Part shown: positions 7,482 to 23,492 of the stretch, one piece after another
How the letters are laid out: each line of letters opens with the position of its first letter
Numbering within the stretch: position 1 is the first letter of the stretch
Made by a program: the position numbers and the translations under genes
Source: Macrostomum lignano
Taxonomy: Eukaryota
DNA: 51,226 bases
NCBI GenBank assembly: GCA_002269645.1
Contig: NIVC01001425.1
Coordinates: 1-51,226, forward strand
Reading direction: 5' to 3'
Notes under the pieces: model-generated
Told to the model about the DNA's origin: nothing
The model's input: the letters and a program-made list of their open reading frames with translations, nothing else
Database searches by the model: none

Positions 7482-9490
7482 TCACTTCTGTTTGCCTTCC
7501 TTCGATTTTACGTCACGTTTTGTCGAGGACTTGTTTGGAGACCGAATTTTCGACTTGCGATCAGCTGCGGCTGAAGCCTGTGCTGCTTGTTGCGGCCCGT
7601 GGGCTGTGCCGTCCTCGCTGCCGCCATAGCGACCGCCGCTTGTTCGGACAGTTTCGTAGCTCCGCTTCGACCGGAACTGAGAGTCCAGCCCGCCCTCCCG
7701 ACGGCAGCAGTCGTGCAGGCGCTGATCGCAGCTGCACGAACGGGTCAACAGAACTTGTTCCAGCTGTTCGTTGCTGCGATCCAACTGGGCGGTCAGAGCC
7801 TCAACAGTCTCCTCCATGTCGCTGTTTCCAGCTGCCCCAGCACCTGCTGCAGATTGTTTCAGCTCGGCCAATTCAGCTTGCACTTTTGACAAATCGGCGC
7901 TGAGACGCGCACGCGCCGTCTGGCTCGCGTCCAGTTGGCGTCGAAAGCTGAGCAGCCGACGCCGCAGGTCGCGATTCTCCGCCTCGGCCGTCTCTCGCTG
8001 GCGCTGCGCTTCTTCTTGGACAGACTCTAGCTGGGCCGCCTGGGTCTCAAGACGAGCTGCCAGGGAATCGATCGTCTCCTGCAGCTCCTCCGCCAGGCGC
8101 CTCCAGTTAGTTGAAGTGTCGGGGCTTTCGGCCTGTGGGCCTGCCTTTGCATCGATGGATCTAAGAGGGGTAAGTTTTGCGATCACAGTTTTTTGCTATT
8201 CTTATGCTCATAGTTTGCCAGCAGTAAGTGATCTTTTTAGAGCCCGGTCATTATTCATTAAGCTGATGCAATCTCGTGGCTAGCCCCGATGTACATTTAT
8301 TCAGCTGTCCAGCGGCACAAAGATTGAACAGTGCTATTGGTGACCCAGCTACTGGTTGGTGATACTTTCCCACGTTGCTGAACTCTGTGCCGTCACGGAT
8401 ACTAAAATAACTAGATAGGCCACTCTGAACTGGCATAACTTAGCAAAACAGCTTTCTACTTTCAGTTCAGTAGCAAAGAAGAATACAAAAGCGATTTTAT
8501 AAAATAAAGGCAGCTGAAATGACTTTGATAAGTTTAGAAGCCCAAGCTTGCAGGCGTAAACAACTTGCTAATTGGTTCACCAATAATGTAGATTGGCCAG
8601 TTCAATGAAATGTACATGGCAGCTTTAGGCTGGAATTCCGAGAAAGGCAATAAAAATTGGGGTGGGGAGGGGCAGGGTTTTTTTATTTTATTAGAGGCAG
8701 GGGGTTGTGTGCACCCTGGCGCACTTTAGGCGACATAGGCACACAACCGGCGAGAGGCATTACTGCCCATTCCGCCGACTCCCCTGAGCAGGCATACAAG
8801 CGCGCGGATACGTTACGCAGACACACACTCACACAGGAGTGTACAGCGGCCCTAACTTTATCAATTGTTAGGCATGTACATTTCACTGCGCCTTGGGGGG
8901 TTGGCTCTCAAGGCCGTTAATTGCACAGGCGAGCCAAGCCGAAATTCCAATTCAGCCCCAAATTAATGTGGCTGCACTTGGAATCGAGCCTGGGTCGCTG
9001 GCACACCAGAGCAGCTGCGCTACCGCTGGGCTACGGCCCCCTATGGCGGGGGAGGGTTTAAGCTGGGGGGAGGAGTCAATAAATGAGCATTGGCTTTAAA
9101 AATACATTAAAATGCTTCAGTTTAACTTACTACTGAACTGAAAGTAGCTTACACGCAAATGTGCTGAGTGGGCCATTTAGTTATTCTAGTTAGTGTATCT
9201 GTGGCTAGACAGAGAAAGTAACGGGAGTTTTTCACTTGGCCAAATGGAAAGTGACCGACAAACAGCACTTACGACGCTGCTTTTCCAGCCAGTTGGTGAA
9301 TAATCTGATTAATTCCAGCTTCAATTCGATCCAACTTGGCATTAGCCGAGCTTTGAGGTTTCTTCTTGTTGCCGACAGAAGAAGCGGACGGCGATGCTTT
9401 GCTGTCGGAAATGTTCGAAGACTTTGCTGTAGCTGTCTCTGACAAACCGTCTGCCACGTGGCTGATTGAATCCGGACTACTCGTAGCCAT
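7482..9490 (-). CDS. Coiled-coil protein of unknown family, about 298 aa; exons 9490-9273 and 8160-7482
   Basis: ATG directly follows an acceptor-like ATTCAG. Donor GTC|GTAAGT at 9273 and acceptor CTCTTAG| at 8160 are both phase 2. Heptad-rich sequence (LAEELQETIDSLAARLETQAAQLESV). Confidence 0.75.
8679..9041 (-). mobile_element. tRNA-headed SINE, family 1 (most complete copy), intronic
   Basis: Minus strand begins GGGGCCGTAGCCCAGCGG (A box) ... GGCTCGATTCC (B box), followed by a body of about 280 nt and an AATAAAATAAAA tail. Two further copies occur in the window. Confidence 0.85.
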
Positions 9491-10280
9491 CTGAATCTCA
9501 GCTTGAAAGCAAATCTGTTGGATATTGGATACTAAACTACAGAATAATGTACCAGAGTATTAGCCGGTCCGAGCCTCTTAGACCAAGCAGAGGAGAGATT
9601 AATCGTTTTTCCAACGCGAATACTGCTTAGCAGAATTACGCACTGCCCCGAACAGTTGATAGGCAAGAATCGTTTTTAACGCGCCATAGCCCCCCCCCCA
9701 CAGCGAGATGTAAGCGATATTAAGAAACGAATTTTCAACACAGCCTCTAACCGCTTCGCAGCCTAACACCTGCGCAACCTTCAAAAAGTAAACAAATATG
9801 ACACGAACAACTTTAAGTCGCTTATGCATCCAAGCGCCATAATAGGCACTAATAGAAATCCAGTACGTGCGTACGTGTATATTTAAAATCAAAATACGAG
9901 CTAATGAAAAATTTAAATGGAAATGGCTAAAATTATTTAATAAAATGAATTCAGGAAATTAGAGAAAAAGTCCTGGTTTATCGGTTAAAATATTGGCACT
10001 GACAGATAAAAACAGATCGTTAAAAAGCTACCGGACATTTCACCTCTGCCTGTAAAGAACAAAGACCAAGAAAAAGGGGAACACTAGCGGGAAATTAAGG
10101 AGGGGAAACGCTAGAGCGGAAATTCCGGGGGGGAATTCCGGAGGGGAATTCCGGAGGGGAAACGTCAGAAAAAGAAATATCGGTAAGCCTGTCGAAACTA
10201 TAGTAGACAAAAAAGGAGCTATTCAAGACAATGATGTGCAAATTAAAACTCTAAACAAAATCGTTTCGGACACTTGCAGC

Positions 10281-12903
10281 TCAAAGCTTGGCCGAAGTCA
10301 CACCGTGTTTGAATCGGCCGGCCGACATGAAGGCCAAATCTTCGCTGGGTGGCTGGCCGGTTGCCATCTCGGACAGCAGCTGGCCAATCACTGGGCCGAG
10401 CTTGAAGCCGTGGCCTGCGGTAATCAATATAAATAACTTAGATATTAGTACAGTAGGTACTATAGGGGGCTGTAGCCTAGTAGTTAGAGCATCAGACTAA
10501 GGACTCAAAGGTTGGGGGTTCGATTCCCCGATCCCACTGGAACAATTTGTGTCCTTGAGCAAGACGCTTAACTCTGCATTTGCTTCAGTTCACCCAGCTG
10601 TAAAATGGGTGCCAGCATTAGCTGGGGTAATTAAGGGTGTGTGTGGTGACCCCCCAGTCCTTGGACTGAACAGCCATACGCAGCCTTCAGATGCGGTTCA
10701 AAACCTACCAGAGCAGCCGCAGACAAACAGGATGTTCCGATGCTTCGGGTGCCGATCGACAATGAGGCCGCGGTCTGGCGTCAGCTGGTGTTAGTAAGTA
10801 AATAGAATGTAAATTATAATTATATTAATAAACATTTTAAACCTTTTTGATAAAAGTAAAAGTATAAACATCCCTTAACTACAGCCAGGTCAATGACTCA
10901 CCGTGTAAATACACTTCTCAGTGACGGCAGGCTCCGGCACCAGATGAGGAAACCACCGCCTAACAAAGTCGGTCAGCTCTGGCAGGTAGTATGGCTCCCG
11001 CTGCTCCCGGGTCTCTCGGATGTCCGGGTCCAAGTCCGGCCCGTCGTGCATGCAGATCTGTTGAGTATTATTGCATTTAATTTTAGCATCCTTACTGCTC
11101 ATCCATATCAGTCACTTTGTGTAGTCGACAAGAACAAAATCACACAGAAGTGCATCCAAACAAAAGTACAAAAACCCCTCAAAGTGCAACTAAACTAAAG
11201 TGCGTGTGCACTAAATTACCACAAAATAAAAGTGCAACCGAACAAAATTGTATCAAAGGTGCCACTACCTAAAATTGCACCTACGTAAAAGTACAAAAGC
11301 ACTAAAGCGCCACCAAAAAAGGTACCCAAACAAAAGTGCAAACACTTGCCTTGACCATACCGGGGTACTCGAGCTCCGGCAGTCCGTACACGTGAAAATC
11401 TTCATCCTGATAGTCAAATGTTGGAAATTTTTCCGGCCCAAAATCGCCAGTCTCGGCAGCACCCTCCCCTCGACGCAGTCGCCAGTACATGGCGGTGACG
11501 CCGATGGGCCGCAGCGGGAGCTCCAGGCCGAGGCCCGACAGCAGCTGGCCCGCCCACGCACCAGCCGCCAGAACCACCGAGTCCGCCGTGAGCTCCTCTG
11601 CAGACGCCGCAGCCGCCGTCCCGCTGCCCGAAAGGCGAAGCCGGACGGAGCCGTCGGGCTGCGGCTCGATGGCCGTCACACGGACGCAATCGCGGAGGCG
11701 ACCACCAAGCTGGGCAACTCGAGAGCGCAGCGCTTGCAAGCACCTGGAGTGATCGGGCCATAGACAGGTGAAAAAGTTTCAAACATTTCGGTAACTTATA
11801 TTTGCGAACGCTATGAAGACTTAAGGGTTACCCCGCTTTTCCAATCACCCAGAAATTCAGCATACTCTGTACAGCATTGAAACGGATAATTATCCGTAGC
11901 CGACTTTATCTTGAAAATGACACTGGTGAGAATGACACTGGTGAGAATGACACTGACACCATGGTCACTGATCAATGCCACGGGTCATTCAGGACATTAC
12001 AGGTCATCCAGGACATCGCAAGTCATTCAGGACATTACGGGTCATCCAGGACATTGCAAGTCATTCAGGACATTACGGGTCATCCAGGACATCGCACGTC
12101 ATTCGACACCACGAGTCATCCGGGACATTACGGGTCATCCAGGACATTGCAAGTCATTCAGGACATTACAGGTCATCCAGGACATTGCAAGTCATTCAAG
12201 ACATTACGGGTCATCCAGGACATCGCAAGTCATTTAGGACATTACGGGTCATCCAGGACATCGCACGTCATTCGACACCACGAATTATCCGGGACATTAC
12301 GGGTCATTCAGGACACCCGAGTCATCCGGGACATTACGGGTCATTCAGGACACCCGAGTCATCCAGGACACCGCAGGTCATCCGGAACATTACAGGTCAT
12401 CAAGGAAACCCGGTAAGATTTCCCCGCATTGGCCTCCACGTGTCCCACCTGTCAGCCAGCAGAATCCCAGCACTGGGATCCAGAACGCAGTCGCGGAATC
12501 CCGCAAGCCGAGGAAACCGACTCGCCAGCGACTGTCCGGACAGCCGCTCGAGCGGCATCGAGTTCGACTCCAGCACCTCGCTGATGTTTCTCAAATACGC
12601 ACCCGACCCCAAGGACGCCATGCCGCAGTTGATGAAGAGTCGCTGGCCGCTGAGGCTCTCAAGGCGGCTCCACAGCGGGAACGCCCGCCTCATCAGTCGC
12701 GCATACTCAGCCTCCTTGTAGGCGTAGCGGGTGATGCGGCTGTGCCCGTGGCTGCTGCCTCTGCTGTGCGGCACCGGGAACTGCTCAAGCAGAGTCACTC
12801 GGTGTCCTCGCTCCAGCAGCTGCCAGGCTGTGCAGAGGCCGTTCACCCCGCAGCCAACCACCGCCACGTGCTGCTGGCGCTGCTGCTGCTGCGCTGCGGC
12901 CGC
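10281..12903 (-). CDS. PIPOX: Peroxisomal sarcosine oxidase / L-pipecolate oxidase, copy 1; exons 12903-12449, 11743-11350, 11057-10902, 10784-10709, 10414-10281
   Basis: FAD motif VAVVGCGVNG, SRGSSHGHSRITR, DPSAGILLADR, LAAGAW, YGLPELEYPG, CIYTLTPD, GCSGHGFKLGP, and C-terminal PTS1 AKL. All five exon phases close (1215 nt). Confidence 0.92.
10465..10670 (+). mobile_element. tRNA-headed CORE(MIR-like)-domain SINE in PIPOX copy 1 intron 4
   Basis: A box TAGCCTAGTAG and B box GGTTCGATTCC, then GTGTCCTTGAGCAAGACGCTTAAC...TTCAGTTCACCCAGCTGTAAAATGGG, which resembles the MIR/CORE consensus as I recall it (GTGACCTTGGGCAAGTTACTTAAC...CTCAGTTTCCTCATCTGTAAAATGGG). The 3' end is approximate. Confidence 0.75.
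11980..12400. repeat. Degenerate 19-nt minisatellite (CAGGACATTACGGGTCATC) in PIPOX copy 1 intron 1
   Basis: Alternating 19-nt variants; the 19-aa periodicity of the spurious ORFs agrees. Confidence 0.9.
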
Positions 12904-12962
12904 CTGAGGTGTTTCGCGTGCAATGTTGGAAACAGTACAAGCAGTACTATATCTGATAGTTA

Positions 12963-15870
12963 GGTGTCAGGTTTTGCAGCAATGTGTCAGGTTCTGCAGT
13001 GATATGACAGGTTCTGCAGCAATGTGTCAGGTTCTGCAGTGATATGACAGGTTCTGCAGTGATGTGTCAGGTTCTGCAGTCGTGTGTCAGGTTCTGCAGC
13101 AATGTGTCAGGTTCTGCAGTGATATGACAGGCTCTGCAGTGATGTGTCAGGTTCTGCAGTGATATGACAGGTTCTGCAGTGATGTGTCAGGTACTGCAGT
13201 CATGTGTCAGGTTCTGCAGCAATGTGTCAGGTTCTGCAGTGATATGACAGGTTCTGCAGTCATGTGTCAGGTTCTGCAGTCGTGTGTCAGGTTCTGCAGT
13301 CATGTGCCAGGTTCTGCAGTCATGTGTCAGGTTCTGCAGTCATGTGTCAGATTCTGCAGTCATGTGTCAGGTTCTGCTGTGATCTGTCAGGTTCTGCTGT
13401 GATCTGTCAGGTTCTGCTGTGATCTGTCAGGTTCTGCTGTGATCTGTCAGGTTCTGCAGTGATGTGTCAGGTTCTGCAGTCATGTGTCAGGTTCTGCAGT
13501 GGTGTGTCAGGTTCTGCAGTGATGTGTCAGGTTCTGCAGTGGTGTGTCAGGTTCTGCAGTCATGTGTCAGGTTCTGCTGTGATATGACGGGTTCTGCAGT
13601 GATGTGTCAGGTTCTTCTGTGATCTGTCAGGTTCTGCAGTGATGTGTCAGGTTCTGCTGTGATCTGTCAGGTTCTGCAGTGATGTGTCAGGTTCTGCTGT
13701 GATGTGTCAGGTTCTGCTGTGATGTTTCAGGTTCTGCAGTGATATGACAGGTGCTGCAGTGATGTGTCAGGTTTGTTGTGATGTGTCAGGCTCTGCAGTG
13801 ATGTGTCAGGTTCTGCAGTGATCTGTCAGGTTCTGTGGTGATGTGTCAGGTTCTGCAGTCATGTGTCAGGCTCTGCAGTGATCTGTCAGGTTCTGCAGTG
13901 ATGTGTCAGGTTCTGCAGTGGTGTGTCAGGTTCTGCAGTGGTGTGTCAGGTTCTGCAGTGGTGTGTCAGGTTCTGCAGTCATGTCTCATGTGTCAGGTTC
14001 TGCTGTGATATGACGGGTTCTGCAGTGATGTGTCAGGTTCTGCTGTGATATGACGGGTTCTGCAGTGATGTGTCAGGTTCTGCTGTGATCTGTCAGGTTC
14101 TGCAGTGATGTGTCAGGTTCTTCTGTGATCTGTCAGGTTCTGCAGTGATGTGTCAGGTTCTGTTGTGATCTGTCAGGTTCTGCAGTGATGTGTCAGGTTC
14201 TTCTGTGATCTGTCAGGTTCTGCAGTGATGTGTCAGGTTCTGTTATGATCTGTCAGGTTCTGCAGTGATGTGTCAGGTTCTGCAGTCATGTGTCAGGCTC
14301 TGCAGTGATGTGTCAGGTTCTGCAGTCATGTGTCAGGCTCTGCAGTGATGTGTCAGGTTCTGCAGTCATGTGTCAAGTACTGCAGTGATGTCTCAGGTTC
14401 TGCAGTCATGTGTCAAGTACTGCAGTGGTGTCAGGTTCTGCAGTCATGTGTCAAGTACTGCAGTGGTGTCAGGTTCTGCAGTCATGTGTCAAGTACTGCA
14501 GTGGTGTGTCAGGTTCTGCAGAGATGTGTCAGGTTCTGCTGTGATGTGTCAGGTTCTGCAGTGATATGACAGGTGCTGCAGTGATATGACAGGTGCTGCA
14601 GTGATATGACAGGTGCTGCAGTGATATGACAGGTGCTGCAGTGATATGACAGGTGCTGCAGTGATGTGTCAGGTTCTGCTGTGATGTGTCAGGTTCTGCT
14701 GTGATGTGTCAGGTTCTGCAGTGATATGACAGGTGCTGCAGTGATATGACAGGTGCTGCAGTGATATGACAGGTTCTGCAGTGATGTGTCAGGCTCTGCA
14801 GTGATGTGTCAGGTTCTGCTGTGATGTGTCAGGTTCTGCTGTGATGTGTCAGGTTCTGCAGTGATATGACAGGTGCTGCAGTGATATGACAGGTGCTGCA
14901 GTGATATGACAGGTTCTGCAGTGATGTGTCAGGCTCTGCAGTGATGTGTCAGGCTCTGCAGTCATGTGTCAGGTACTGCAGTCATGTGTCAGGTTCTGCA
15001 GTGATGTGTCAGGTTCTGCTGTGATGTGTCAGGTTCTGCTGTGATGTTTAAGGTTCTACAGTGATATGACAGGTGCTGCAGTGATGTGTCAGGTTCTGCT
15101 GTGATGTGTCAGGCTCTGCAGTGTTGTGTCAGGTTCTGCAGTGATATGACAGATGCTGCAGTGATATGACAGGTTCTGCAGTGATGTGTCAGGCTCTGCA
15201 GTGATGTGTCAGGTTTTGCAGTCATGTGTCAGGTACTGCAGTCATGTGTCAGGTTCTGCAGTGATGTGTCAGGTTCTGCTGTGATGTGTCAGGTTCTGCT
15301 GTGATGTGTCAGGTTCTGCAGTGATATGACAGGTGCTGCAGTGATATGACAGGTGCTGCAGTGATATGACAGGTTCTGCAGTGATGTGTCAGGCTCTGCA
15401 GTGATGTGTCAGGCTCTGCAGTCATGTGTCAGGTACTGCAGTCATGTGTCAGGTTCTGCAGTGATGTGTCAGGTTCTGCTGTGATGTGTCAGGTTCTGCT
15501 GTGATGTTTAAGGTTCTACAGTGATATGACAGGTGCTGCAGTGATGTGTCAGGTTCTGCTGTGATGTGTCAGGCTCTGCAGTGTTGTGTCAGGTTCTGCA
15601 GTGATATGACAGATGCTGCAGTGATATGACAGGTTCTGCAGTGATGTGTCAGGCTCTGCAGTGATGTGTCAGGTTTTGCAGTCATGTGTCAGGTACTGCA
15701 GTCATGTGTCAGGTTCTGCAGTGATGTGTCAGGTTCTGCTGTGATGTGTCAGGTTCTGCTGTGATGTGTCAGGTTCTGCAGTGATATGACAGGTGCTGCA
15801 GTGATATGACAGGTGCTGCAGTGATATGACAGGTGCTGCAGTGATATGTCAGGTGCTGCAGTGATGTGTC
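12963..15870. repeat. 20-nt minisatellite (TGTCAGGTTCTGCAGTGATG), about 145 copies, between the two PIPOX copies
   Basis: Directly visible tandem array with variant units. Confidence 0.97.
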
Positions 15871-16222
15871 AAAAGCCTATGAGTCTTAAAAGAACCTAGG
15901 TAGTTAAACGCAGATGTTTAAGCAAAAAAGCTAGGGTATTGGTAGTGAGGAGGGCTCTATTTCTTTAAAAATCAGGTAACCAAAAGTTAAGTCAATCAAC
16001 TTGCTAATAAGTATCAGTCAAAGAAATATAAATTTTGTGTATTTGTTGATAACAGGAGAAATCAATGAAAAATCAAGTAAATAAATTGTATTGAAAACTA
16101 AATAAAAATCGATCTCAAACCATATAGCAGTTTAAATAAAAACACAATTAGAAATACCAAAATTTTTATGCTAAAACATGCGAATTAAAACCATAAACAA
16201 AATCATTTCCGACACTTGCAGC

Positions 16223-19200
16223 TCAAAGCTTGGCCGAAGTGACACCGTGTTTAAATCGGCCGGCCGACATGAAGGCCAAATCCTGGCTGGGTGGCTGGCC
16301 GGTTGCCATCTCGGACAGCAGCTGGCCAATCGCAGGGCCGAGCTTGAAGCCGTGGCCTGAGAATTCGCGGGACAGAAACAGAGTTTGGTCAACAGGGAAT
16401 GCGCAACCAACCCGATGTACTAGTGTTGGGTAACCTTCATGTACTTTGAAGAAGTAGCGGTGACAGAAGCAGCGGTGACAAAAGCAGCGGTGACAGAAGC
16501 AGCGGTGACAAAAGCAGCGGTGACAGAAGCAACGGTGACAAAAGCAGCGGTGACAGAAGCAGCGGTGACAGAAGCAGCGGTGACAGAAGCAGCGGTGACA
16601 AAAGCAGCGGTGACAGAAGCAACGGTGACAGAAGCAGCAGTGACAAAAGCAGCGGTGACAGAAGCAGCGGTGACAGAAGCAGCGGTGACAAAAGCAGCGG
16701 TGACAGAAGCAGCGGTGACAGAAGCAGCGGTGACAGAAGCAGCGGTGACAGAAGCAGCGGTGACAAAAGCAGCGGTGACAGAAGCAGCGGTGACAGAAGC
16801 AGCGGTGACAGAAGCAACGGTGACAGAAGTAGCGGTAACAAAAGCAAAGGTGACAGAAGCAACGGTGACAGAACCAACTGTGACAGAAGCAACGGGACAG
16901 AAGTAGCAGTGACAAAAGCAACGGTGACAGAAGTAACTGTGACAGAAGCAACGGTGACAGAACCAACTGTGACAGAAGCAATGGTGACAGAAGCAACGGT
17001 GACAGAAGCAACTGTGACAGAAGTAACGGTGACAGAAGTAGCAGTGACAAAAGCAGCGGTGACAGAAGCAACTGTGACAGAAGCAACTGTGACAGAAGCA
17101 ACGGTGACAGAAGCAACTGTGACAGAAGTAACGGTGACAGAAGCAACGGTGACAGAAGCAACTGTGACAGAAGCAACTGTGACAGAAGCAACTGTGACAG
17201 AAGCAACGGTGACAGAAGCAACGGTGACAGAAGCAACGGTGACAGAAGCAACGGTGACAGAAGCAACGGTGACAGAAGCAACTGTGACATAAGCAACTGT
17301 GGCAGAAATAACGGTGACAGAAGTAACTGTGACAGAAGCAACTGTGACAGAAGCAACGGTGACAGAAGCAACGGTGACAGAAGCAACGGTGACAGAAGCA
17401 ACGGTGACAGAAGCAACGGTGACAGAAGCAACGGTGACAGAAGCAACGGTGACAGAAGCAACGGTGACAAGCAACGGTGACAGAAACAACGGTGACAGAA
17501 GCAACTGTGGCAGAAATAACGGTGACAGAAGTAAGGGTGACGGAAGCATTTTACAGTATTTTGACCTAGACTAAGCGTATAGTTTAATACATGTATAAAA
17601 TGTACATGCAGACACTAAATCATAGCTACATATAATATTATAGAGAAACTTGACCCAAATGAGCTCACCTGAGCAGCCGCACACAAATACAATGTTGCGA
17701 TGGCTCGGGTGCCGGTCCACAATCAGGCCGCTATCGGGTGTGAGCTGGGTGAGGAGAACATTTACTAGTTATAATTATTTGTTAGATAAAAGGGGATTTT
17801 CTCTGCCTACAATATGAATGACTCACCGTGTAAATACACTTCTCAGTGACGGCAGGCTCCGGCACCAGGTCTGGGAACCACCGCTTAACAAAATCGGCCA
17901 GCTCTGGCAGATAGTATGGCTCCCGCTGCTCCCGGGACTCCCGGATGTCCGGGTCCAAGTCCGGCCCGTCGTGCATGCAGATCTGGACAATAAGCGCGGG
18001 GCAAGCAAGTAAACTTAGGCGCAGGTAAAAAAATTAACAATAAACGTTAATAAATTTTATCCAAACTGGCTAGAGTACTAATGCACCAAAGTTCCATTAA
18101 AGTACAACAAAAAAGTGCAAACACTTGCCTTGACCATGTCGGGGTACTCGAGCTCCGGCAGTCCGTACACGTGCAGCTTCTCATCCTCGTACACAAAAGT
18201 TGGAAATTTTTCCGGCCTGAAGTCGCCGGTGACGGCAGCGCCGTCCGCTCGACGCAGTCGCCAGTACATGGCGGTGACGCCGATGGGCCGCAGCGGCAGG
18301 TCCAGGCCGAGGCCCGACAGCAGCTGGCCCGCCCACGCACCAGCCGCCAGAACCACCGAGTCCGCCGTGAGCTCCTCTGCAGACGCCGCAGCCGCCGTCC
18401 CGCTGCCCGAAAGGCGAAGCCGGACGGAGCCGTCGGGCTGCGGCTCGATGGCCGTCACGCGGACGCAATCGCGGAGGCGACCACCAAGCTGGGCAACTCG
18501 AGAGCGCAGCGTCTGCAAGCACCTGGAGTGATCGGGCCATAGACAGGTATTTCAAGAGGAATTTCTTAGACTGAACTTATTCAGAGCTAACGGACATTTG
18601 CTTTGTTCTCTGTACACTGTTAGAGTTAACCGGATAACCCGGATACTCCGGTAACCCGGATACTCCGGTAACCCGGATACTCCGGTAACCCGGATACTCC
18701 GGTAACCCGGATACTCCGGTAACCCGGATACTCCGGTAACCCGGATACTCCGGTAACCCGGATACTCCGGTAACCCGGATACTCCGGTAACCCGGATACT
18801 CCGGTAACCCGGATACTCCGGTAACCCGGATACTCCGGTAACCCGGATACTCCGGTAACCCGGATACTCCGGTAACCCGGATACTCCGGTAACCCGGATA
18901 CTCCGGTAACCCGGATACTCCGGTAACCCGGATACTCCGGTAACCCGGATACTCCGGTAACCCGGATACTCCGGTAACCCGGATACTCCGGTAACCCGGA
19001 TACTCCGGTAACCCGGATACTCCGGTAACCCGGATACTCCGGTAACCCGGATACTCCGGTAACCCGGATACTCCGGTAACCCGGATACTCCGGTAACCCG
19101 GATACTCCGGTAACCCGGATACTCCGGTAACCCGGATACTCCGGTAACCCGGATACTCCGGTAACCCGGATACTCCGGTAACCCGGATACTCCGGTAACC

Positions 19201-19767
19201 CGGATACTCCGGTAACCCGGATACTCCGGTAACCCGGATACTCCGGTAACCCGGATACTCCGGTAACCCGGATACTCCAGTAACCAGGATTTTTCAGTCA
19301 AAGTTGTCCTACCTGTCAGCCAGCAGAATCCCAGCACTGGGATCCAGAACGCAGTCGCGGAATCCCGCAAGCCGAGGAAACCGACTCGCCAGCGACTGTC
19401 CGGACAGCCGCTCGAGCGGCATCGAGTTCGACTCCAGCACCTCGCTGATGTTTCTCAAATACGCACCCGACCCCAAGGACGCCATGCCGCAGTTGATGAA
19501 GAGTCGCTGGCCGCTGAGGCTCTCAAGGCGGCTCCACAGCGGGAACGCCCGCCTCATCAGTCGCGCATACTCAGCCTCCTTGTAGGCGTAGCGGGTGATG
19601 CGGCTGTGCCCGTGGCTGCTGCCTCTGCTATGCGGCACCGGGAACTGCTCAAGCAGAGTCACTCGGTGTCCTCGCTCCAGCAGCTGCCAGGCTGTGCAGA
19701 GGCCGTTCACCCCGCAGCCAACCACCGCCACGTGCTGCTGGCGCTGCTGCTGCTGCGCTGCGGCCGC
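16223..19767 (-). CDS. PIPOX: Peroxisomal sarcosine oxidase / L-pipecolate oxidase, copy 2; exons 19767-19313, 18522-18129, 17982-17827, 17744-17669, 16356-16223
   Basis: Same motifs, identical exon lengths (455/394/156/76/134) and phases as copy 1; ends SAKL-stop. Confidence 0.92.
16455..17540. repeat. 15-nt minisatellite (GTGACAGAAGCAGCG / GTGACAGAAGCAACG), about 70 copies, in PIPOX copy 2 intron 4
   Basis: Tandem array lying between donor 17668 and acceptor 16357. Confidence 0.95.
18628..19285. repeat. Near-perfect 17-nt minisatellite (CCCGGATACTCCGGTAA), about 38 copies, in PIPOX copy 2 intron 1
   Basis: Essentially invariant units; the spurious ORF has a 17-aa period. Confidence 0.97.
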
Positions 19768-19861
19768 CTGAGGTGTTTCGCGTGCGACTTTCTAGGCCAT
19801 AGACAACGAGGCTTTTCTTGTGACTGTCTAATTAGGTCCCGAGCTATAGAAAGAGGATTTA

Positions 19862-20202
19862 GTTACAGCCAGAGGACTGTGTGCACCCTGGTGCACTTCA
19901 AGCGACATTGTCGCACAAACGGCGAGAGGCATTACTGCCCATTCCGCCGACTTCCCTGAGCAGGCACACAAGCGCGCGGATACGTACGCAGTCATACGCA
20001 CAGGCACACACTCACACAGGAGTGTACAGCGGCCCTAACTTTATTTATTATCAGGCATGTACACTTCACTGCGCCTTGGGGGTTGGGCCTCAAGGGCGTT
20101 GATTGCACGAGCAGAGCCAAGCCGAGATTCCAATTCAGCCCCAAAATAATGTGACTGAACTTGGAATCCAGCCTGGGACACTGGCTAGACCGCTAGGCTA
20201 TC
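19862..20202 (-). mobile_element. tRNA-headed SINE, family 1, with internally shortened head
   Basis: Matches 8679-9041 along the body. A box TAGCCTAGCGG and B-box-like GGCTGGATTCC on the minus strand. Confidence 0.8.
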
Positions 20203-20547
20203 TAATTGTGCCCTGAGCCATGGGTAGTGCTAATTCAATTGTTTTGCAACATTAAACAAATAACGAATTTAATGTCATGAACATAATGAAAATCATTATC
20301 AATTGTATATAATTAATTAATCTTTCTCAGCTGAAGTTGTATATTCTAGCTTGTTTATAGTTAAAAGAATAAATTTATTTGCAGCAAGAAAATAATTAAT
20401 TTAAAACAAACACGCGAATATACAACTACAAGTTTAAACGGGTTGAAAGACAAGGAAAGGCAAAGGACAATAAATTTATAAACACTGAAGACACAGCCTG
20501 GAGGGCCAGTGAGAACAAAATAGACAACCAGTACTGAAAGCTGGTAA

Positions 20548-21385
20548 GGACACAAGCTTAGATAACTGGTGAGGACACAAGCTTAGCTAATCGGTGAGGA
20601 CACAAGCTTAGCTAACCAGTGAGGACACAAGCTTTGAAAATCGGTGAGAACACAAGCTTTGAAAACCGGTGAGGACACAAGCTTAGATAACCGGTGAGGA
20701 CACAAGCTTAGCTAACCGGTGAGGACACAAGCTTAGCTAACCAGTGAGGACACAAGCTTTGAAAATCGGTGAGAACACAAGCTTTGAAAACCGGTGAGGA
20801 CACAAGCTTAGATAACCGGTGAGGACACAAGCTTAGATAACCGGTGAGGACACAAGCTTAGATAACCGGTGAGGACACAAGCTTAGATAACCGGTGAGGA
20901 CACAAGCTTAGATAACCGGTGAGGACACAAGCTTAGATAACTGGTGAGGACACAAGCTTTGAAAATCGGTGAGAACACAAGCTTTGAAAACCGGTGAGGA
21001 CACAAGCTTAGATAACCGGTGAGGACACAAGCTTAGATAACCGGTGAGGACACAAGCTTAGCTAACCGGTGAGGACACAAGCTTAGCTAACCGGTGAGGA
21101 CACAAGCTTAGCTAACCGGTGAGGACACAAGCTTAGCTAACCGGTGAGGACACAAGCTTTGAAAATCGGTGAGAACACAAGCTTTGAAAACCGGTGAGGA
21201 CACAAGCTTAGATAACCGGTGAGGACAAAAGCTTAGATAACCGGTGAGGACACAAGCTTAGCTAACCGGTGAGGACACAAGCTTAGATAACCGGTGAGGA
21301 CACAAGCTTAGCTAACCGGTGAGGACACAAGCTTAGATAACCGGTGAGGACACAAGCTTTGAAAATCGGTGAGGACACAAGCTTG
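20548..21385. repeat. 25-nt minisatellite (CCGGTGAGGACACAAGCTTAGATAA), about 33 copies, intergenic
   Basis: Tandem array with recurring TTTGAAAA variants. Confidence 0.95.
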
Positions 21386-21485
21386 GACGCAAACTACTGA
21401 ATAAGAACATGGAAAGCAAGCAGGATGACACTCAAACAGACAAAAAGAGAATCACATATCAAATTGAGGTTGAGAACCAAGGAAA

Positions 21486-23492
21486 CTAAATGCAACTATC
21501 GAGTCTAATCTCAGCGATGGCTTTCAACATTCGCTCCCGCTCAGTTGGGTCATTCACGCCCATGCCAATCAGGTCGTCTTCCGTTAGCAACAGGAATGCG
21601 TCGGCATCGATCTCCTGCTCGCGCAGAGTGGGCAGATAAGCGGACAATCCGAATTTGCCTAGCAACAAAGTCAGTTTGTCGTCGTCTGCGGTTGTAAATC
21701 GGAACAAAGGATTGCAAATCCCATTGCCAGGCCGGACTAGGAGACTGGGAGCGAACAGTTTGGCTTGATTCCCAGCTACAGACAGCGACTCTGTCTGGGG
21801 CAAACGCGCCAACATCTGGTGCACTTTTGTAAGCGCCTCGCGCCAATCCGGCGCCGCTTGAACTAGACGTTCGGCGCCAATCCAATGAGATTCAGCGTAG
21901 CCGGGATTGCCAAGCGTGTCGCGCCAGCGATCTGCGAATTGGTTGGCCATGCAAGAGAAGCGGACTGTCTTTTTGCTGGAGGCCACTTCGAGTGGCGGTG
22001 GCGGCCGTGGCGGCAGTGGCGGCGGCGAAGGGCCTGGCGGTGAGCGACAGCAAGAGAGAAGCAGGTCGCTTTTGCGCCTGGGGCGGAGCTCAGTGCTCAG
22101 CTGCTGTTGTTGCTTCGTGCAGTCTTCAAGTTCTCCGGCTGCTGCTGGTTGGAGAGGCCTTGATGCTTCTGTCCGAGTCTCCGTCTCGCTGTCCGAGTCT
22201 TCCTCGCCGTCGCTGCCGGCTGGAAGCAGCCTCGCCAGCTTGCAGTGGCCCAACAGTCTGGCTACCTGGCGCGGCGTCAGCCCGTTGATGTCGCGTCGGG
22301 AGCCCGAAGCTCCGGCCTGTTCAATCACCAGGCTGCACGCCTCGGCGCAACCACCCGCGGCAGCCGCGTGCAATGGCGAAGTCGCCGCGCTGTCGCCGGC
22401 ACCGTCAAACGGAAAGCCGCGCGCCAGCAAGTAGCGCATCGAGCCCATGGCGCCGCGAAATGCAGCCGGACAGAGCGGCGCGCCGAGTTGGCGAGCGACT
22501 CGAAAACCGCCGTCGGATTCTTCGACCGCAAACTTTGCGCCTTTGTAGCTTTCGTCTCTTGCCACACCTCCGCTTCCGCCTCTATCCACACCTCCGCTTC
22601 CGTCTCTATCCACACCTCCGCTTCCGTCTCTATCCACACCTCCGCTTCCGTCTCTATCCACACCTCCGCTTCCGTCTCTATCCACACCTCCGCTTCCGTC
22701 TCTATCCACACCTCCGCTGCCGTCTCTATCCACACCTCCGCTGCCGCCTCTATCCACACCTCCGCTTCCGTCTCTATCCACATCTCCGCTGCCGTCTCTA
22801 GCCACACCTCCGCTTCCGCCTCTATCCACACCTCCGCTTCCGTCTCTATCCACACCTCCGCTGCCGTCTCTATCCACACCTCCGCTGCCGTCTCTATCCA
22901 CACCTCCGCTTCCGTCTCTATCCACACCTCCGCTGCCGTCTCTAGCCACACCTCCGCTGCCGTCTCTAGCCACACCTCCGCTTCCGCCTCTAGCCACACC
23001 TCCGCTTCCGCCTCTAGCCACACCTCCGCTTCCGCCTCTATCCACACCTCCACTTCCGTCTCTATTAACGCCTCCATCGCTTCCACAATCGGTGGCCAGG
23101 GCCAGCCCGGCCAGGAACTCCATCAGCCTGACGTGATTGCCAGCAGCGGCCAACGTGAATCCATCGGCGCCATAGACGGTGACCCGGCGAGTGTCCGCCC
23201 GGCGTGCCAGGACACGCGCCGCGGCCAGATGGCCCAGACGGCAGGCGACAAGAAACGGACTCCAGCCAAGCAGATTAACGGCATCCGGGTCGAGCCCGTG
23301 CCGTTCAATCAGTTCGTTGATTGCGGCGGTACAGCCTCCGGCGGCCGCATAGTGCAGCGCGGTGTTGCCGTGGTTGTCAAGCCGGCGAAGATCCTCTGGA
23401 GTTGACGGAGCCGCCGACAATCGGGCCAATATTTCAGCCTCCTTGCCGGAGATTAGCAGCGAGAATAGAACAGTGCCGCTGTCGGAAGACAT
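21486..23492 (-). CDS. Ankyrin repeat and SAM domain protein (ANKS3-like), apparently single exon, 668 aa
   Basis: Ankyrin repeats ([49 protein letters not shown]) and a C-terminal SAM domain ([38 protein letters not shown]). The orthologue among ANKS genes is not certain. Confidence 0.8.
22560..23070. repeat. 24-nt minisatellite (CCTCCGCTTCCGTCTCTATCCACA), about 21 copies, inside the ANK-SAM ORF
   Basis: In frame on the minus strand, encoding (GGVDRDGS)n. Confidence 0.95.

What the first reader, a model, noticed from the sequence alone, without database searches (positions are those of the whole stretch)
12864..19800. Both PIPOX copies lack a usable genomic start codon; a phase-0 acceptor suggests the initiator AUG comes from a spliced leader
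Seen: in both copies the frame carrying the FAD-binding VAVVGCGVNG motif hits an upstream stop with no ATG (copy 1 TGA near 12965; copy 2 TAG near 19793). The first in-frame ATG lies after the Rossmann motif (RLMRR) and would give an inactive enzyme. Both copies share GCACGCGAAACACCTCAG|GCG GCC GCA, a YAG acceptor exactly in phase 0 (12903, 19767), and similarity stops 18 nt upstream of it. I see no shared upstream cis exon; copy 1 has only about 350 nt of unique DNA beyond a 2.9-kb repeat. Established: flatworm spliced leaders end in AUG, which can serve as the initiator. Inference: trans-splicing here gives M-AAAAQQQQRQQHVAVVGCG, a 405-aa protein.
Basis: partly seen in the sequence, partly recalled or inferred. 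Interest (0 to 1): 0.72.

Follow-up and report, generated by a model that had tools for sequence, protein, structure and literature searches.

The report
Flatworm genes borrowing a spliced-leader start codon
Two tandem sarcosine/pipecolate oxidase genes of the flatworm Macrostomum lignano have no start codon of their own and very probably get it from the ATG that ends the worm's trans-spliced leader, a mechanism already known in flatworms.

Summary
The window is the first 51 kb of Macrostomum lignano contig NIVC01001425.1. It carries two tandem five-exon peroxisomal sarcosine oxidase (PIPOX) genes on the minus strand.

In both genes the frame holding the FAD-binding motif meets a stop upstream of exon 1 with no ATG in between:
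- copy 1: TGA at 12969-12967
- copy 2: TAG at 19794-19792

The first in-frame ATG is codon 71, past the GxGxxG motif. Both genes share an 18-nt CAG acceptor that sits exactly in phase 0.

- The published 35-nt M. lignano spliced leader ends in ATG, and that is its only ATG.
- Four GenBank models and five UniProt models of this family start at exactly this acceptor, without Met.
- In an alignment, the Met of other animals' orthologues falls on the first Ala.
- dN/dS of 0.21 between the copies argues that both genes are functional.
- Repeat-adjusted distances to the upstream genes (412 and 877 nt) meet the published operon criterion.

I could not reach any read that shows the leader-exon junction. 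One of six paralogues, on another contig, keeps an open genomic ATG 33 nt upstream. Start codons donated by the leader were shown in Schistosoma in 2006, so this is a new member of a known kind and of modest interest.

The parts
12904..12921 (-). Copy 1: the 18-nt block GCACGCGAAACACCTCAG ending in the proposed trans-splice acceptor (CAG|G). All six paralogues share it.
12967..12969 (-). Copy 1: first upstream in-frame stop (TGA). There is no ATG between it and the acceptor.
12449..12903 (-). Copy 1, exon 1. It starts in phase 0 with GCG GCC GCA (AAAAQQQQRQQHVAVVGCG) and carries the GxGxxG FAD-binding motif.
12865..12867 (-). Copy 1: in-frame GTG (codon 13). This is the only plausible non-AUG start that would keep the Rossmann motif (rival explanation).
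12691..12693 (-). Copy 1: first in-frame genomic ATG (codon 71), downstream of the FAD-binding motif.
11350..11743 (-). Copy 1, exon 2. Its donor is GC (a GC-AG intron).
10902..11057 (-). Copy 1, exon 3.
10709..10784 (-). Copy 1, exon 4.
10281..10414 (-). Copy 1, exon 5 with the TGA stop. The protein ends in -AKL, which resembles a peroxisomal targeting signal (PTS1).
12964..15871 (.). Satellite of 20-nt units (145 copies) that fills most of the space between the 3' end of copy 2 and the acceptor of copy 1.
19768..19785 (-). Copy 2: the same 18-nt acceptor block.
19792..19800 (-). Copy 2: ATG GCC TAG in the coding frame just upstream of the acceptor. The ATG is closed by a stop after two codons. 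The paralogue in L002 reads ATG GCC ACG here and stays open.
19313..19767 (-). Copy 2, exon 1. It differs from copy 1 exon 1 at 1 of 455 nt.
19555..19557 (-). Copy 2: first in-frame genomic ATG (codon 71).
18129..18522 (-). Copy 2, exon 2 (GC donor).
17827..17982 (-). Copy 2, exon 3.
17669..17744 (-). Copy 2, exon 4.
16223..16356 (-). Copy 2, exon 5 with the TGA stop.
19786..21485 (-). The sequence that trans-splicing would discard (the outron), lying between the upstream Ank/SAM gene and copy 2. It holds a dispersed repeat of about 330 bp (19857-20185) and a satellite of 25-nt units (20543-21384).
21486..21488 (-). Stop codon of the upstream same-strand Ank/SAM-domain gene, the candidate first gene of the operon.

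Best explanation
Both window genes are functional Macrostomum lignano peroxisomal sarcosine/L-pipecolate oxidase genes that have no start codon of their own.

The proposed mechanism is as follows. Each gene is transcribed as part of a longer precursor, probably a polycistronic one running Ank/SAM gene -> PIPOX copy 2 -> PIPOX copy 1 -> downstream gene. The 35-nt spliced leader is trans-spliced onto the CAG acceptor at 12904/12903 and at 19768/19767. The leader's 3'-terminal AUG, which is its only AUG, then lies directly in phase with GCG GCC GCA. That gives M-AAAAQQQQRQQHVAVVGCG..., a 405-residue enzyme.

Shown here: the missing genomic ATG, the phase of the acceptor, the intact and constrained ORFs, the identity of the organism and its leader sequence, and the gene-model boundaries.

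Inferred: that the leader is actually joined at this site, and that ribosomes start at its AUG.
For: 1. Organism and leader. The window has the same coordinates as bases 1-51226 of M. lignano contig NIVC01001425.1. The species' single leader ends in ATG (PMC8629364), and the Macrostomum literature notes that ATG as a translation start (PMC10468722).
2. No genomic start. Upstream in-frame stops occur with no intervening ATG in both copies, and in 5 of 6 paralogues.
3. Splice signal. The acceptor is a CAG, like all eight cis acceptors of these genes. The 18 nt before it are the only upstream sequence that all six copies share.
4. Gene-model boundaries. Four GenBank models ('partial') and five UniProt models start at exactly the first base after the CAG. 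With in-frame stops 24 and 63 nt upstream, an ORF called from a transcript that began 3 nt or more upstream of the acceptor would carry extra N-terminal residues. In that annotation, 5' boundaries were cut at peaks of leader-containing reads (PMC5730564). The 5'-partial models of neighbouring genes, by contrast, start at ragged positions that are not acceptors.
5. Only the Met is missing. The Met of orthologues aligns with the first Ala. Pfam DAO covers residues 12-377 over the whole profile. Solved sarcosine oxidases align from residue 13.
6. The genes are under selection. dN/dS is 0.21 at dS 0.20 across exons 2-5 between the two copies.
7. Operon context. After subtracting tandem repeats, the intergenic distances are 412 nt (copy 2 to copy 1) and 877 nt (Ank/SAM to copy 2). 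Both are under the 1-kb criterion of PMC8629364.
8. No cis alternative found. No ATG-started, phase-0 mini-exon with a GT[AG]AG donor lies upstream of either copy.
9. Precedent. More than 40 Schistosoma mansoni cDNAs need the leader's AUG (Cheng et al. 2006, as cited in PMC9851317).
Against: - I could not obtain a read, EST or transcript contig that shows the leader-exon junction. The supplementary files I could search do not mention these genes, and PMC8629364 has none held as text.
- The acceptor CCTCAG departs at one position from the enriched trans-acceptor motif [T/C]TNCAG.
- '5'-partial' models are common in this annotation for unrelated reasons, so the boundary argument rests on nine models agreeing, not on the flag itself.
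- One paralogue (L002, exon 1 at 10001) has an open in-frame genomic ATG 33 nt upstream.
- An in-frame GTG at codon 13 would still leave a Rossmann N-terminus about as long as that of the solved enzyme 7exs.
- The context of the leader's AUG has U at position -3, which is not optimal.
Confidence: 0.8

Rival explanations
1. Translation starts at a non-AUG codon. The best candidate is the in-frame GUG at codon 13 (12867-12865 and 19731-19729), giving M-AVVGCGVNG.... This could happen whether or not the mRNA is trans-spliced.
For: The GTG is in frame in both copies. The solved sarcosine oxidase 7exs has only two residues before the equivalent VIVVGLG strand, so a protein starting there could still bind FAD. 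Non-AUG starts are documented in organisms that use spliced leaders (PMC9851317).
Against: The context is poor, with C at -3. If the mRNA is trans-spliced, scanning ribosomes meet an in-frame AUG 39 nt earlier. Orthologues carry 4-12 residues before the strand, which matches the longer N-terminus.
Confidence: 0.06
2. An unannotated upstream cis exon, ending in phase 0 and containing an ATG, is spliced onto the same acceptor.
For: With any GT accepted as donor, 15-16 ATG-started phase-0 mini-exons can be drawn upstream of each copy. Transcript 5' ends in this annotation are often incomplete.
Against: None of those candidates has the GT[AG]AG donor found at about 65% of M. lignano introns. The two copies share nothing beyond -18. 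Upstream of copy 1 lie only 60 unique nt, a 2.9-kb satellite and the 3' end of copy 2. None of the nine RNA-guided models has such an exon.
Confidence: 0.05
3. The ancestral start is the genomic ATG 33 nt upstream of the acceptor, still open in the L002 paralogue (MATKVARETPQAAAA...). On this view the two window genes, and three other copies, have lost it. They are then untranslated or give only a truncated product from Met71, and are young pseudogenes at the level of translation.
For: L002 reads ATG TCT ATG GCC ACG AAA... in frame and open, where copy 2 of the window has ATG GCC TAG. The family is recently and heavily duplicated, so redundancy could tolerate such losses.
Against: dN/dS of 0.21 between the copy 1 and copy 2 lineages shows long-term constraint on both, yet all three copy-1-type genes lack any upstream ATG. 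All splice sites and ORFs are intact. The GenBank model of the L002 gene also starts at the acceptor rather than at that ATG.
Confidence: 0.06
4. The missing ATG is an error of the PacBio-based assembly.
For: The older ML2-derived models of this family (P0004, P0005) are riddled with frameshifts.
Against: Six independently assembled copies agree base for base over the acceptor block and the start of exon 1, and five of them agree in lacking an open ATG. The rest of both genes translates without a single frameshift.
Confidence: 0.02

Closest known systems
ORFs started by the flatworm spliced leader's 3'-terminal AUG (Cheng, Cohen, Ndegwa & Davis 2006, J Biol Chem 281:733; called 'slORFs' in PMC9851317)
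   Same: A flatworm leader that ends in AUG. An acceptor in phase with the ORF. No usable genomic AUG upstream of an essential domain. The leader therefore has to supply the initiator Met.
   Different: Those cases were shown with Schistosoma mansoni cDNAs and translation assays. Here the organism is the free-living Macrostomum lignano, the gene is a peroxisomal sarcosine oxidase present in six paralogous copies, and the leader-exon junction is inferred from gene-model boundaries rather than seen in reads.
Trans-splicing that resolves operons in M. lignano (Ustyantsev & Berezikov 2021, PMC8629364; Wudarski et al. 2017, PMC5730564)
   Same: Same-strand neighbours lie less than 1 kb apart once repeats are subtracted. 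The intergenic spaces are filled with satellites. The downstream genes begin at a CAG acceptor.
   Different: Those papers treat trans-splicing as 5'-end processing and do not discuss genes that depend on the leader's AUG. Whether these particular genes are flagged as trans-spliced in their browser tracks could not be checked here.
Peroxisomal sarcosine oxidase / L-pipecolate oxidase (PIPOX) and bacterial monomeric sarcosine oxidase (PDB 1el5, 7exs)
   Same: A full-length DAO domain, the GxGxxG motif and the HGFK motif. 38-45% identity to the 13 animal PIPOX proteins in the alignment (35% to a 14th, from a brachiopod). A C-terminal -AKL.
   Different: The orthologues aligned all begin with Met; these two genes do not encode one.

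Membership tests
Flatworm ORFs started by the spliced leader's AUG (Cheng et al. 2006) | The organism has a spliced leader whose 3' end is AUG. | tested here: met
   The window matches M. lignano contig NIVC01001425.1. The published 35-nt leader ends in ATG and has no other ATG.
Flatworm ORFs started by the spliced leader's AUG (Cheng et al. 2006) | The acceptor is in phase 0 with the ORF, with no stop between the junction and the conserved domain. | tested here: met
   CAG|GCG GCC GCA... reads straight into VAVVGCG in both copies.
Flatworm ORFs started by the spliced leader's AUG (Cheng et al. 2006) | There is no usable genomic in-frame AUG upstream of the essential N-terminal domain. | tested here: met
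   Stops at 12969-12967 and 19794-19792 with no open ATG; the first in-frame ATG is codon 71. The same holds for 5 of 6 paralogues; the L002 copy is the exception.
Flatworm ORFs started by the spliced leader's AUG (Cheng et al. 2006) | The mature mRNA carries the leader joined at that acceptor. | not testable with these tools
   No reads or transcripts could be reached (no supplement held for PMC8629364). Indirect support: nine public gene models start at exactly this base, and the Mlig_3_7 pipeline cuts 5' ends at peaks of leader-containing reads.
Flatworm ORFs started by the spliced leader's AUG (Cheng et al. 2006) | Translation starts at the leader's AUG. | not testable with these tools
   This needs N-terminal proteomics, ribosome profiling or a reporter assay.
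M. lignano operons resolved by trans-splicing (PMC8629364 criterion) | The upstream gene is on the same strand and less than 1 kb away after repeats are subtracted. | tested here: met
   Copy 2 stop to copy 1 acceptor: 3,320 nt minus the 2,908-nt satellite = 412 nt. Ank/SAM stop to copy 2 acceptor: 1,719 nt minus the 842-nt satellite = 877 nt.
Peroxisomal sarcosine oxidase / PIPOX (Pfam DAO, PF01266) | Full-length DAO domain with the N-terminal GxGxxG dinucleotide-binding motif. | tested here: met
   DAO match at E = 3e-55 over residues 12-377, covering profile positions 1-353 of 353. Columns G17, G19 and G22 are invariant in the alignment.
Peroxisomal sarcosine oxidase / PIPOX (Pfam DAO, PF01266) | Closest relatives are animal PIPOX proteins and solved monomeric sarcosine oxidases. 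| tested here: met
   Among the hits listed from other animals, those that cover most of the query are 35-44% identical to it. Best solved-structure matches: 7exs at E = 1.5e-51 and 1el5 at 8.6e-47.
Peroxisomal sarcosine oxidase / PIPOX (Pfam DAO, PF01266) | C-terminal peroxisomal targeting signal of type 1. | tested here: inconclusive
   Both proteins end in -AKL. From my own knowledge this resembles the SKL-type signal. Import into peroxisomes was not tested.

The most novel reading that the evidence does not exclude
The whole six-copy PIPOX family of M. lignano depends on trans-splicing for translation, not merely for 5'-end processing. The paralogue on NIVC01002264.1, which still has an open genomic ATG 33 nt upstream in the discarded sequence, would then be a snapshot of a start codon being handed over from the gene to the spliced leader (or the reverse). 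The near-identity of exon 1 plus its 18-nt acceptor block among copies that have otherwise diverged would reflect gene conversion keeping this leader-dependent 5' module uniform.
Probability: 0.3. Interest if true: 0.45.

Novelty: new member of a known kind. Interest (0 to 1): 0.3.

Why it matters
If confirmed, this is a clean example in a free-living flatworm of a conserved metabolic enzyme whose reading frame is completed only at the RNA level.

It has a practical use. Some of the '5'-partial' proteins in the M. lignano GenBank and UniProt sets may be complete once the leader's Met is added, and a simple rule could flag them: the CDS starts in phase 0 right after a trans-splice acceptor, and there is an in-frame stop upstream.

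It also matters for transgene design in this model organism. A construct built from the genomic 5' region of such a gene would lack a start codon.

It does not change what is known about the mechanism, which was established in Schistosoma in 2006.

Tried and rejected
- Spliced-leader RNA gene in the window: no match to the 35-nt leader with up to 3 mismatches, and no Rfam family at gathering score anywhere in the window.
- Direct RNA evidence:
  - No transcript-derived M. lignano protein (for example from Logan assemblies) appeared among the close hits.
  - A second protein search with only the N-terminal 115 residues returned four unrelated short fragments. It did not even return the known M. 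lignano proteins, so I treat it as uninformative.
  - An exact search for the junction TTATTGCATG|GCGGCCGCAGCGCAG in metagenome contigs found nothing, as expected for that collection.
- Gene-level flags in the literature: no paper text holds the gene IDs Mlig009847, Mlig006639 or Mlig007500. The held supplements of PMC5730564 and PMC5816591 do not contain them, and PMC8629364 has no supplement held as text.
- The '5'-partial' flag as proof of trans-splicing: rejected. Neighbouring Ank/SAM and TRPM-like models are also partial, but they start at ragged positions that are not acceptors, 0-9 nt after a genomic ATG.
- Cis-exon hypothesis: enumerating candidates gave none with a consensus donor.
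- Pseudogene hypothesis: rejected on intact splice sites and ORFs and on dN/dS of 0.21.
Full report
**What is there**

The window carries two tandem copies of one gene on the minus strand. I rebuilt both as five-exon models with canonical splice sites: all acceptors are CAG, and intron 2 is a GC-AG intron.

| | Exon 1 | Exon 2 | Exon 3 | Exon 4 | Exon 5 | Stop |
|---|---|---|---|---|---|---|
| Copy 1 | 12903-12449 | 11743-11350 | 11057-10902 | 10784-10709 | 10414-10284 | TGA |
| Copy 2 | 19767-19313 | 18522-18129 | 17982-17827 | 17744-17669 | 16356-16226 | TGA |

The two translations are identical, residue for residue, to GenBank PAA68080.1 and PAA68081.1 of Macrostomum lignano. The contig look-up shows that the window has the same coordinates as bases 1-51226 of contig NIVC01001425.1 in assembly GCA_002269645.1.

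The protein is a peroxisomal sarcosine/L-pipecolate oxidase:
- The Pfam DAO domain covers residues 12-377 over the full profile.
- It is 38-45% identical to the 13 animal PIPOX proteins aligned with it, and 35% to a 14th from a brachiopod.
- The best solved relatives are monomeric sarcosine oxidases.
- The C-terminus is -AKL.

**Checking the observation**

On the minus strand both copies read ...GCACGCGAAACACCTCAG|GCG GCC GCA GCG CAG..., which translates to AAAAQQQQRQQHVAVVGCGVNG.

- In copy 1 the frame is closed upstream by TGA at 12969-12967.
- In copy 2 it is closed by TAG at 19794-19792.
- Neither copy has an ATG between that stop and the acceptor.
- Copy 2 has ATG GCC TAG immediately upstream, an ATG that is closed after two codons.
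- The first in-frame ATG is codon 71 (12693 and 19557), which is 59 residues into the DAO domain and past GxGxxG.
- The only earlier ATG in exon 1 is out of frame, at nt 200.
- The two copies stop being alignable exactly 18 nt upstream of the acceptor.

**The pattern is a property of the family**

The contig holds an inverted duplicate of the whole locus at 73.5-99.6 kb (L003). A second contig, NIVC01002264.1, holds a third version (L002). Each has the same order: Ank/SAM gene, then two PIPOX genes; a TRPM-like gene follows in the window and in L003, and the L002 locus ends before that point.

All six exon-1 copies share the 18-nt acceptor block:
- The three copy-1-type genes all have the TGA and no ATG.
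- Two of the three copy-2-type genes have ATG GCC TAG.
- The L002 copy reads ATG TCT ATG GCC ACG AAA GTC GCA CGC GAA ACA CCT CAG|GCG..., which is open and in frame.

Five of six genes therefore lack a genomic start, and one keeps a possible start in the sequence that trans-splicing would remove.

**The genes are functional**

Across exons 2-5 the two window copies differ by dS 0.20 and dN 0.042, so dN/dS is 0.21. All splice sites are intact.

In an alignment with 14 orthologues from molluscs, echinoderms, chordates and a brachiopod, the orthologues' initiator Met falls in the same column as the first Ala of the M. lignano proteins. The orthologues have 4-12 residues before the first beta strand. 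Nothing but the Met itself is missing.

**Where the Met most likely comes from**

M. lignano has one described spliced leader, CGGTCTCTTACTGCGAAGACTCAATTTATTGCATG. It is carried by about 30% of the species' genes (PMC8629364). Its only ATG is its last three bases. Joining it to either exon 1 gives ATG GCG GCC GCA..., that is MAAAAQQQQRQQHVAVVGCG and 405 codons.

The best evidence available here that the leader really is joined at this site is the behaviour of the public gene models. Four GenBank models (PAA59419.1, PAA68080.1, PAA68081.1, PAA68091.1, all flagged 'partial') and five UniProt models from the earlier assembly begin at exactly the first base after the CAG.

The in-frame stops lie only 24 and 63 nt upstream. 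An ORF called on a transcript that began 3 nt or more upstream of the acceptor would therefore carry extra residues (...ARETPQ). So the transcript models must begin at the acceptor, give or take 2 nt.

In the Mlig_3_7 pipeline, 5' boundaries of genes were set by cutting transcriptional units at peaks of reads from which the leader had been trimmed (PMC5730564).

The 'partial' flag alone is not diagnostic. The neighbouring Ank/SAM and TRPM-like models are also 5'-partial, but they start at ragged positions that are not acceptors. The weight lies in nine models agreeing on one CAG.

**Genomic context**

Both genes sit downstream of a same-strand gene, separated mostly by satellite DNA:

| Interval | Raw distance | Satellite subtracted | Adjusted distance |
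|---|---|---|---|
| Copy 2 stop to copy 1 acceptor | 3,320 nt | 2,908 nt (20-nt units) | 412 nt |
| Ank/SAM stop to copy 2 acceptor | 1,719 nt | 842 nt (25-nt units) | 877 nt |

Both adjusted distances fall under the 1-kb criterion used to call operons in this species. The same paper notes that repeats inflate intergenic distances within operons.

Two fused UniProt models also exist: PIPOX plus the downstream coiled-coil gene (P0002), and PIPOX plus PIPOX (P0124). They fit read-through precursors, but I do not know how those models were built, so I give them little weight.

**Rival explanations**

- **An upstream cis exon.** It would have to end in phase 0 and contain an ATG. Enumeration finds 15-16 such mini-exons per copy if any GT is accepted as donor. 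None has the GT[AG]AG donor, which PMC8629364 found in 122,399 of 187,627 regions around M. lignano cis donor sites. The two copies share no upstream sequence beyond -18.
- **Non-AUG initiation at the GTG of codon 13.** This cannot be excluded on structural grounds, because the solved enzyme 7exs has only two residues before the equivalent strand. However, the context is poor, and on a trans-spliced mRNA an in-frame AUG comes first.
- **Translational pseudogenes derived from an L002-type ancestor with a genomic ATG.** This is hard to square with the constraint between the copy 1 and copy 2 lineages, since all copy-1-type genes lack any such ATG.
- **Assembly error.** This is unlikely, given six concordant copies.

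**Comparison with what is known**

That flatworm leaders end in AUG, and that this AUG can be the initiator Met, was established for Schistosoma mansoni. [quoted passage not shown] 2006, as summarised in PMC9851317 and PMC12582326).

The Macrostomum literature also notes the terminal ATG as a translation start codon (PMC10468722).

I found no paper that names these genes or reports leader-dependent ORFs in M. lignano. I therefore class this as a new member of a known kind. It is a correct and neat inference from raw sequence, but it would not surprise a specialist.

**What could not be done**

No RNA reads, ESTs or transcript assemblies of M. lignano were reachable with these tools. The searchable supplements did not list the genes, and one paper had no supplement held. 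The junction itself therefore remains inferred. The decisive test is a simple search of the public RNA-seq runs for the leader-exon junction.

Noticed in passing
window 12449-12921 versus 19313-19785: Exon 1 plus the 18 nt before it differs at only 1 of 455 exon bases between the two copies (dS 0.009). Exons 2-5 have dS 0.20. The near-identical tract ends at the acceptor block on one side and about 2 nt past the donor on the other. This looks like gene conversion confined to the 5' module, which is flanked on both sides by unrelated satellites.
   Followed up: partly
L002 9960-10000 (contig NIVC01002264.1): The copy-2-type paralogue on this contig reads ATG TCT ATG GCC ACG AAA... in frame and open into exon 1. 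Window copy 2 and the L003 copy have ATG GCC TAG at the same place. It is the only one of six copies with a possible genomic start codon, and the direction of the change cannot be determined without an outgroup.
   Followed up: partly
window 1-23000; L003 (same contig, 73493-99559, opposite orientation); L002: The block Ank/SAM gene -> PIPOX x2 occurs three times in the assembly (a TRPM-like gene follows in the window and in L003; the L002 locus ends before that point): twice on this contig as an inverted pair and once on another contig. This fits the known duplicated large chromosome and hidden polyploidy of the DV1 line.
   Followed up: partly
window 11983-12406, 12964-15871, 16450-17548, 18630-19290, 20543-21384, 22548-23065: Six different tandem arrays, with units of 19, 20, 15, 17, 25 and 24 nt, fill the introns and intergenic spacers of this locus. 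Homologous introns of the two PIPOX copies hold unrelated satellites: intron 1 has 19-nt units in copy 1 and 17-nt units in copy 2. The 15-nt array in intron 4 of copy 2 creates spurious ORFs of 370-415 codons.
   Followed up: partly
window 19857-20185, 8685-9002 (same orientation), 2172-2450 (opposite orientation): A dispersed repeat of about 330 bp, 85-87% identical between copies, lies 90 nt upstream of the copy 2 acceptor and at two other places in the window. It was not classified.
   Followed up: no
window 11349-11344 and 18128-18123 (minus strand): Intron 2 of both PIPOX copies has a GC donor (GTCAAG|gcaagt), so it is a GC-AG intron conserved between the paralogues.
   Followed up: no
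L002 6111; L003 5521 and 20095: The GenBank CDS models of the neighbouring Ank/SAM and TRPM-like genes are 5'-partial and start 0, 6 or 9 nt after a genomic in-frame ATG, at positions that are not acceptors. These look like ragged transcript ends in the annotation that cost the proteins their real Met.
   Followed up: no
window 9490-9530 (minus strand): The next gene downstream starts MATSSPDSI at 9490 and encodes a coiled-coil-like protein, fused to PIPOX in UniProt model A0A1I8IG67. It is preceded by two acceptor-like sites, tttgctttcaag| and gattcag|ATG. The second would place the leader's ATG directly in front of the gene's own ATG.
   Followed up: no
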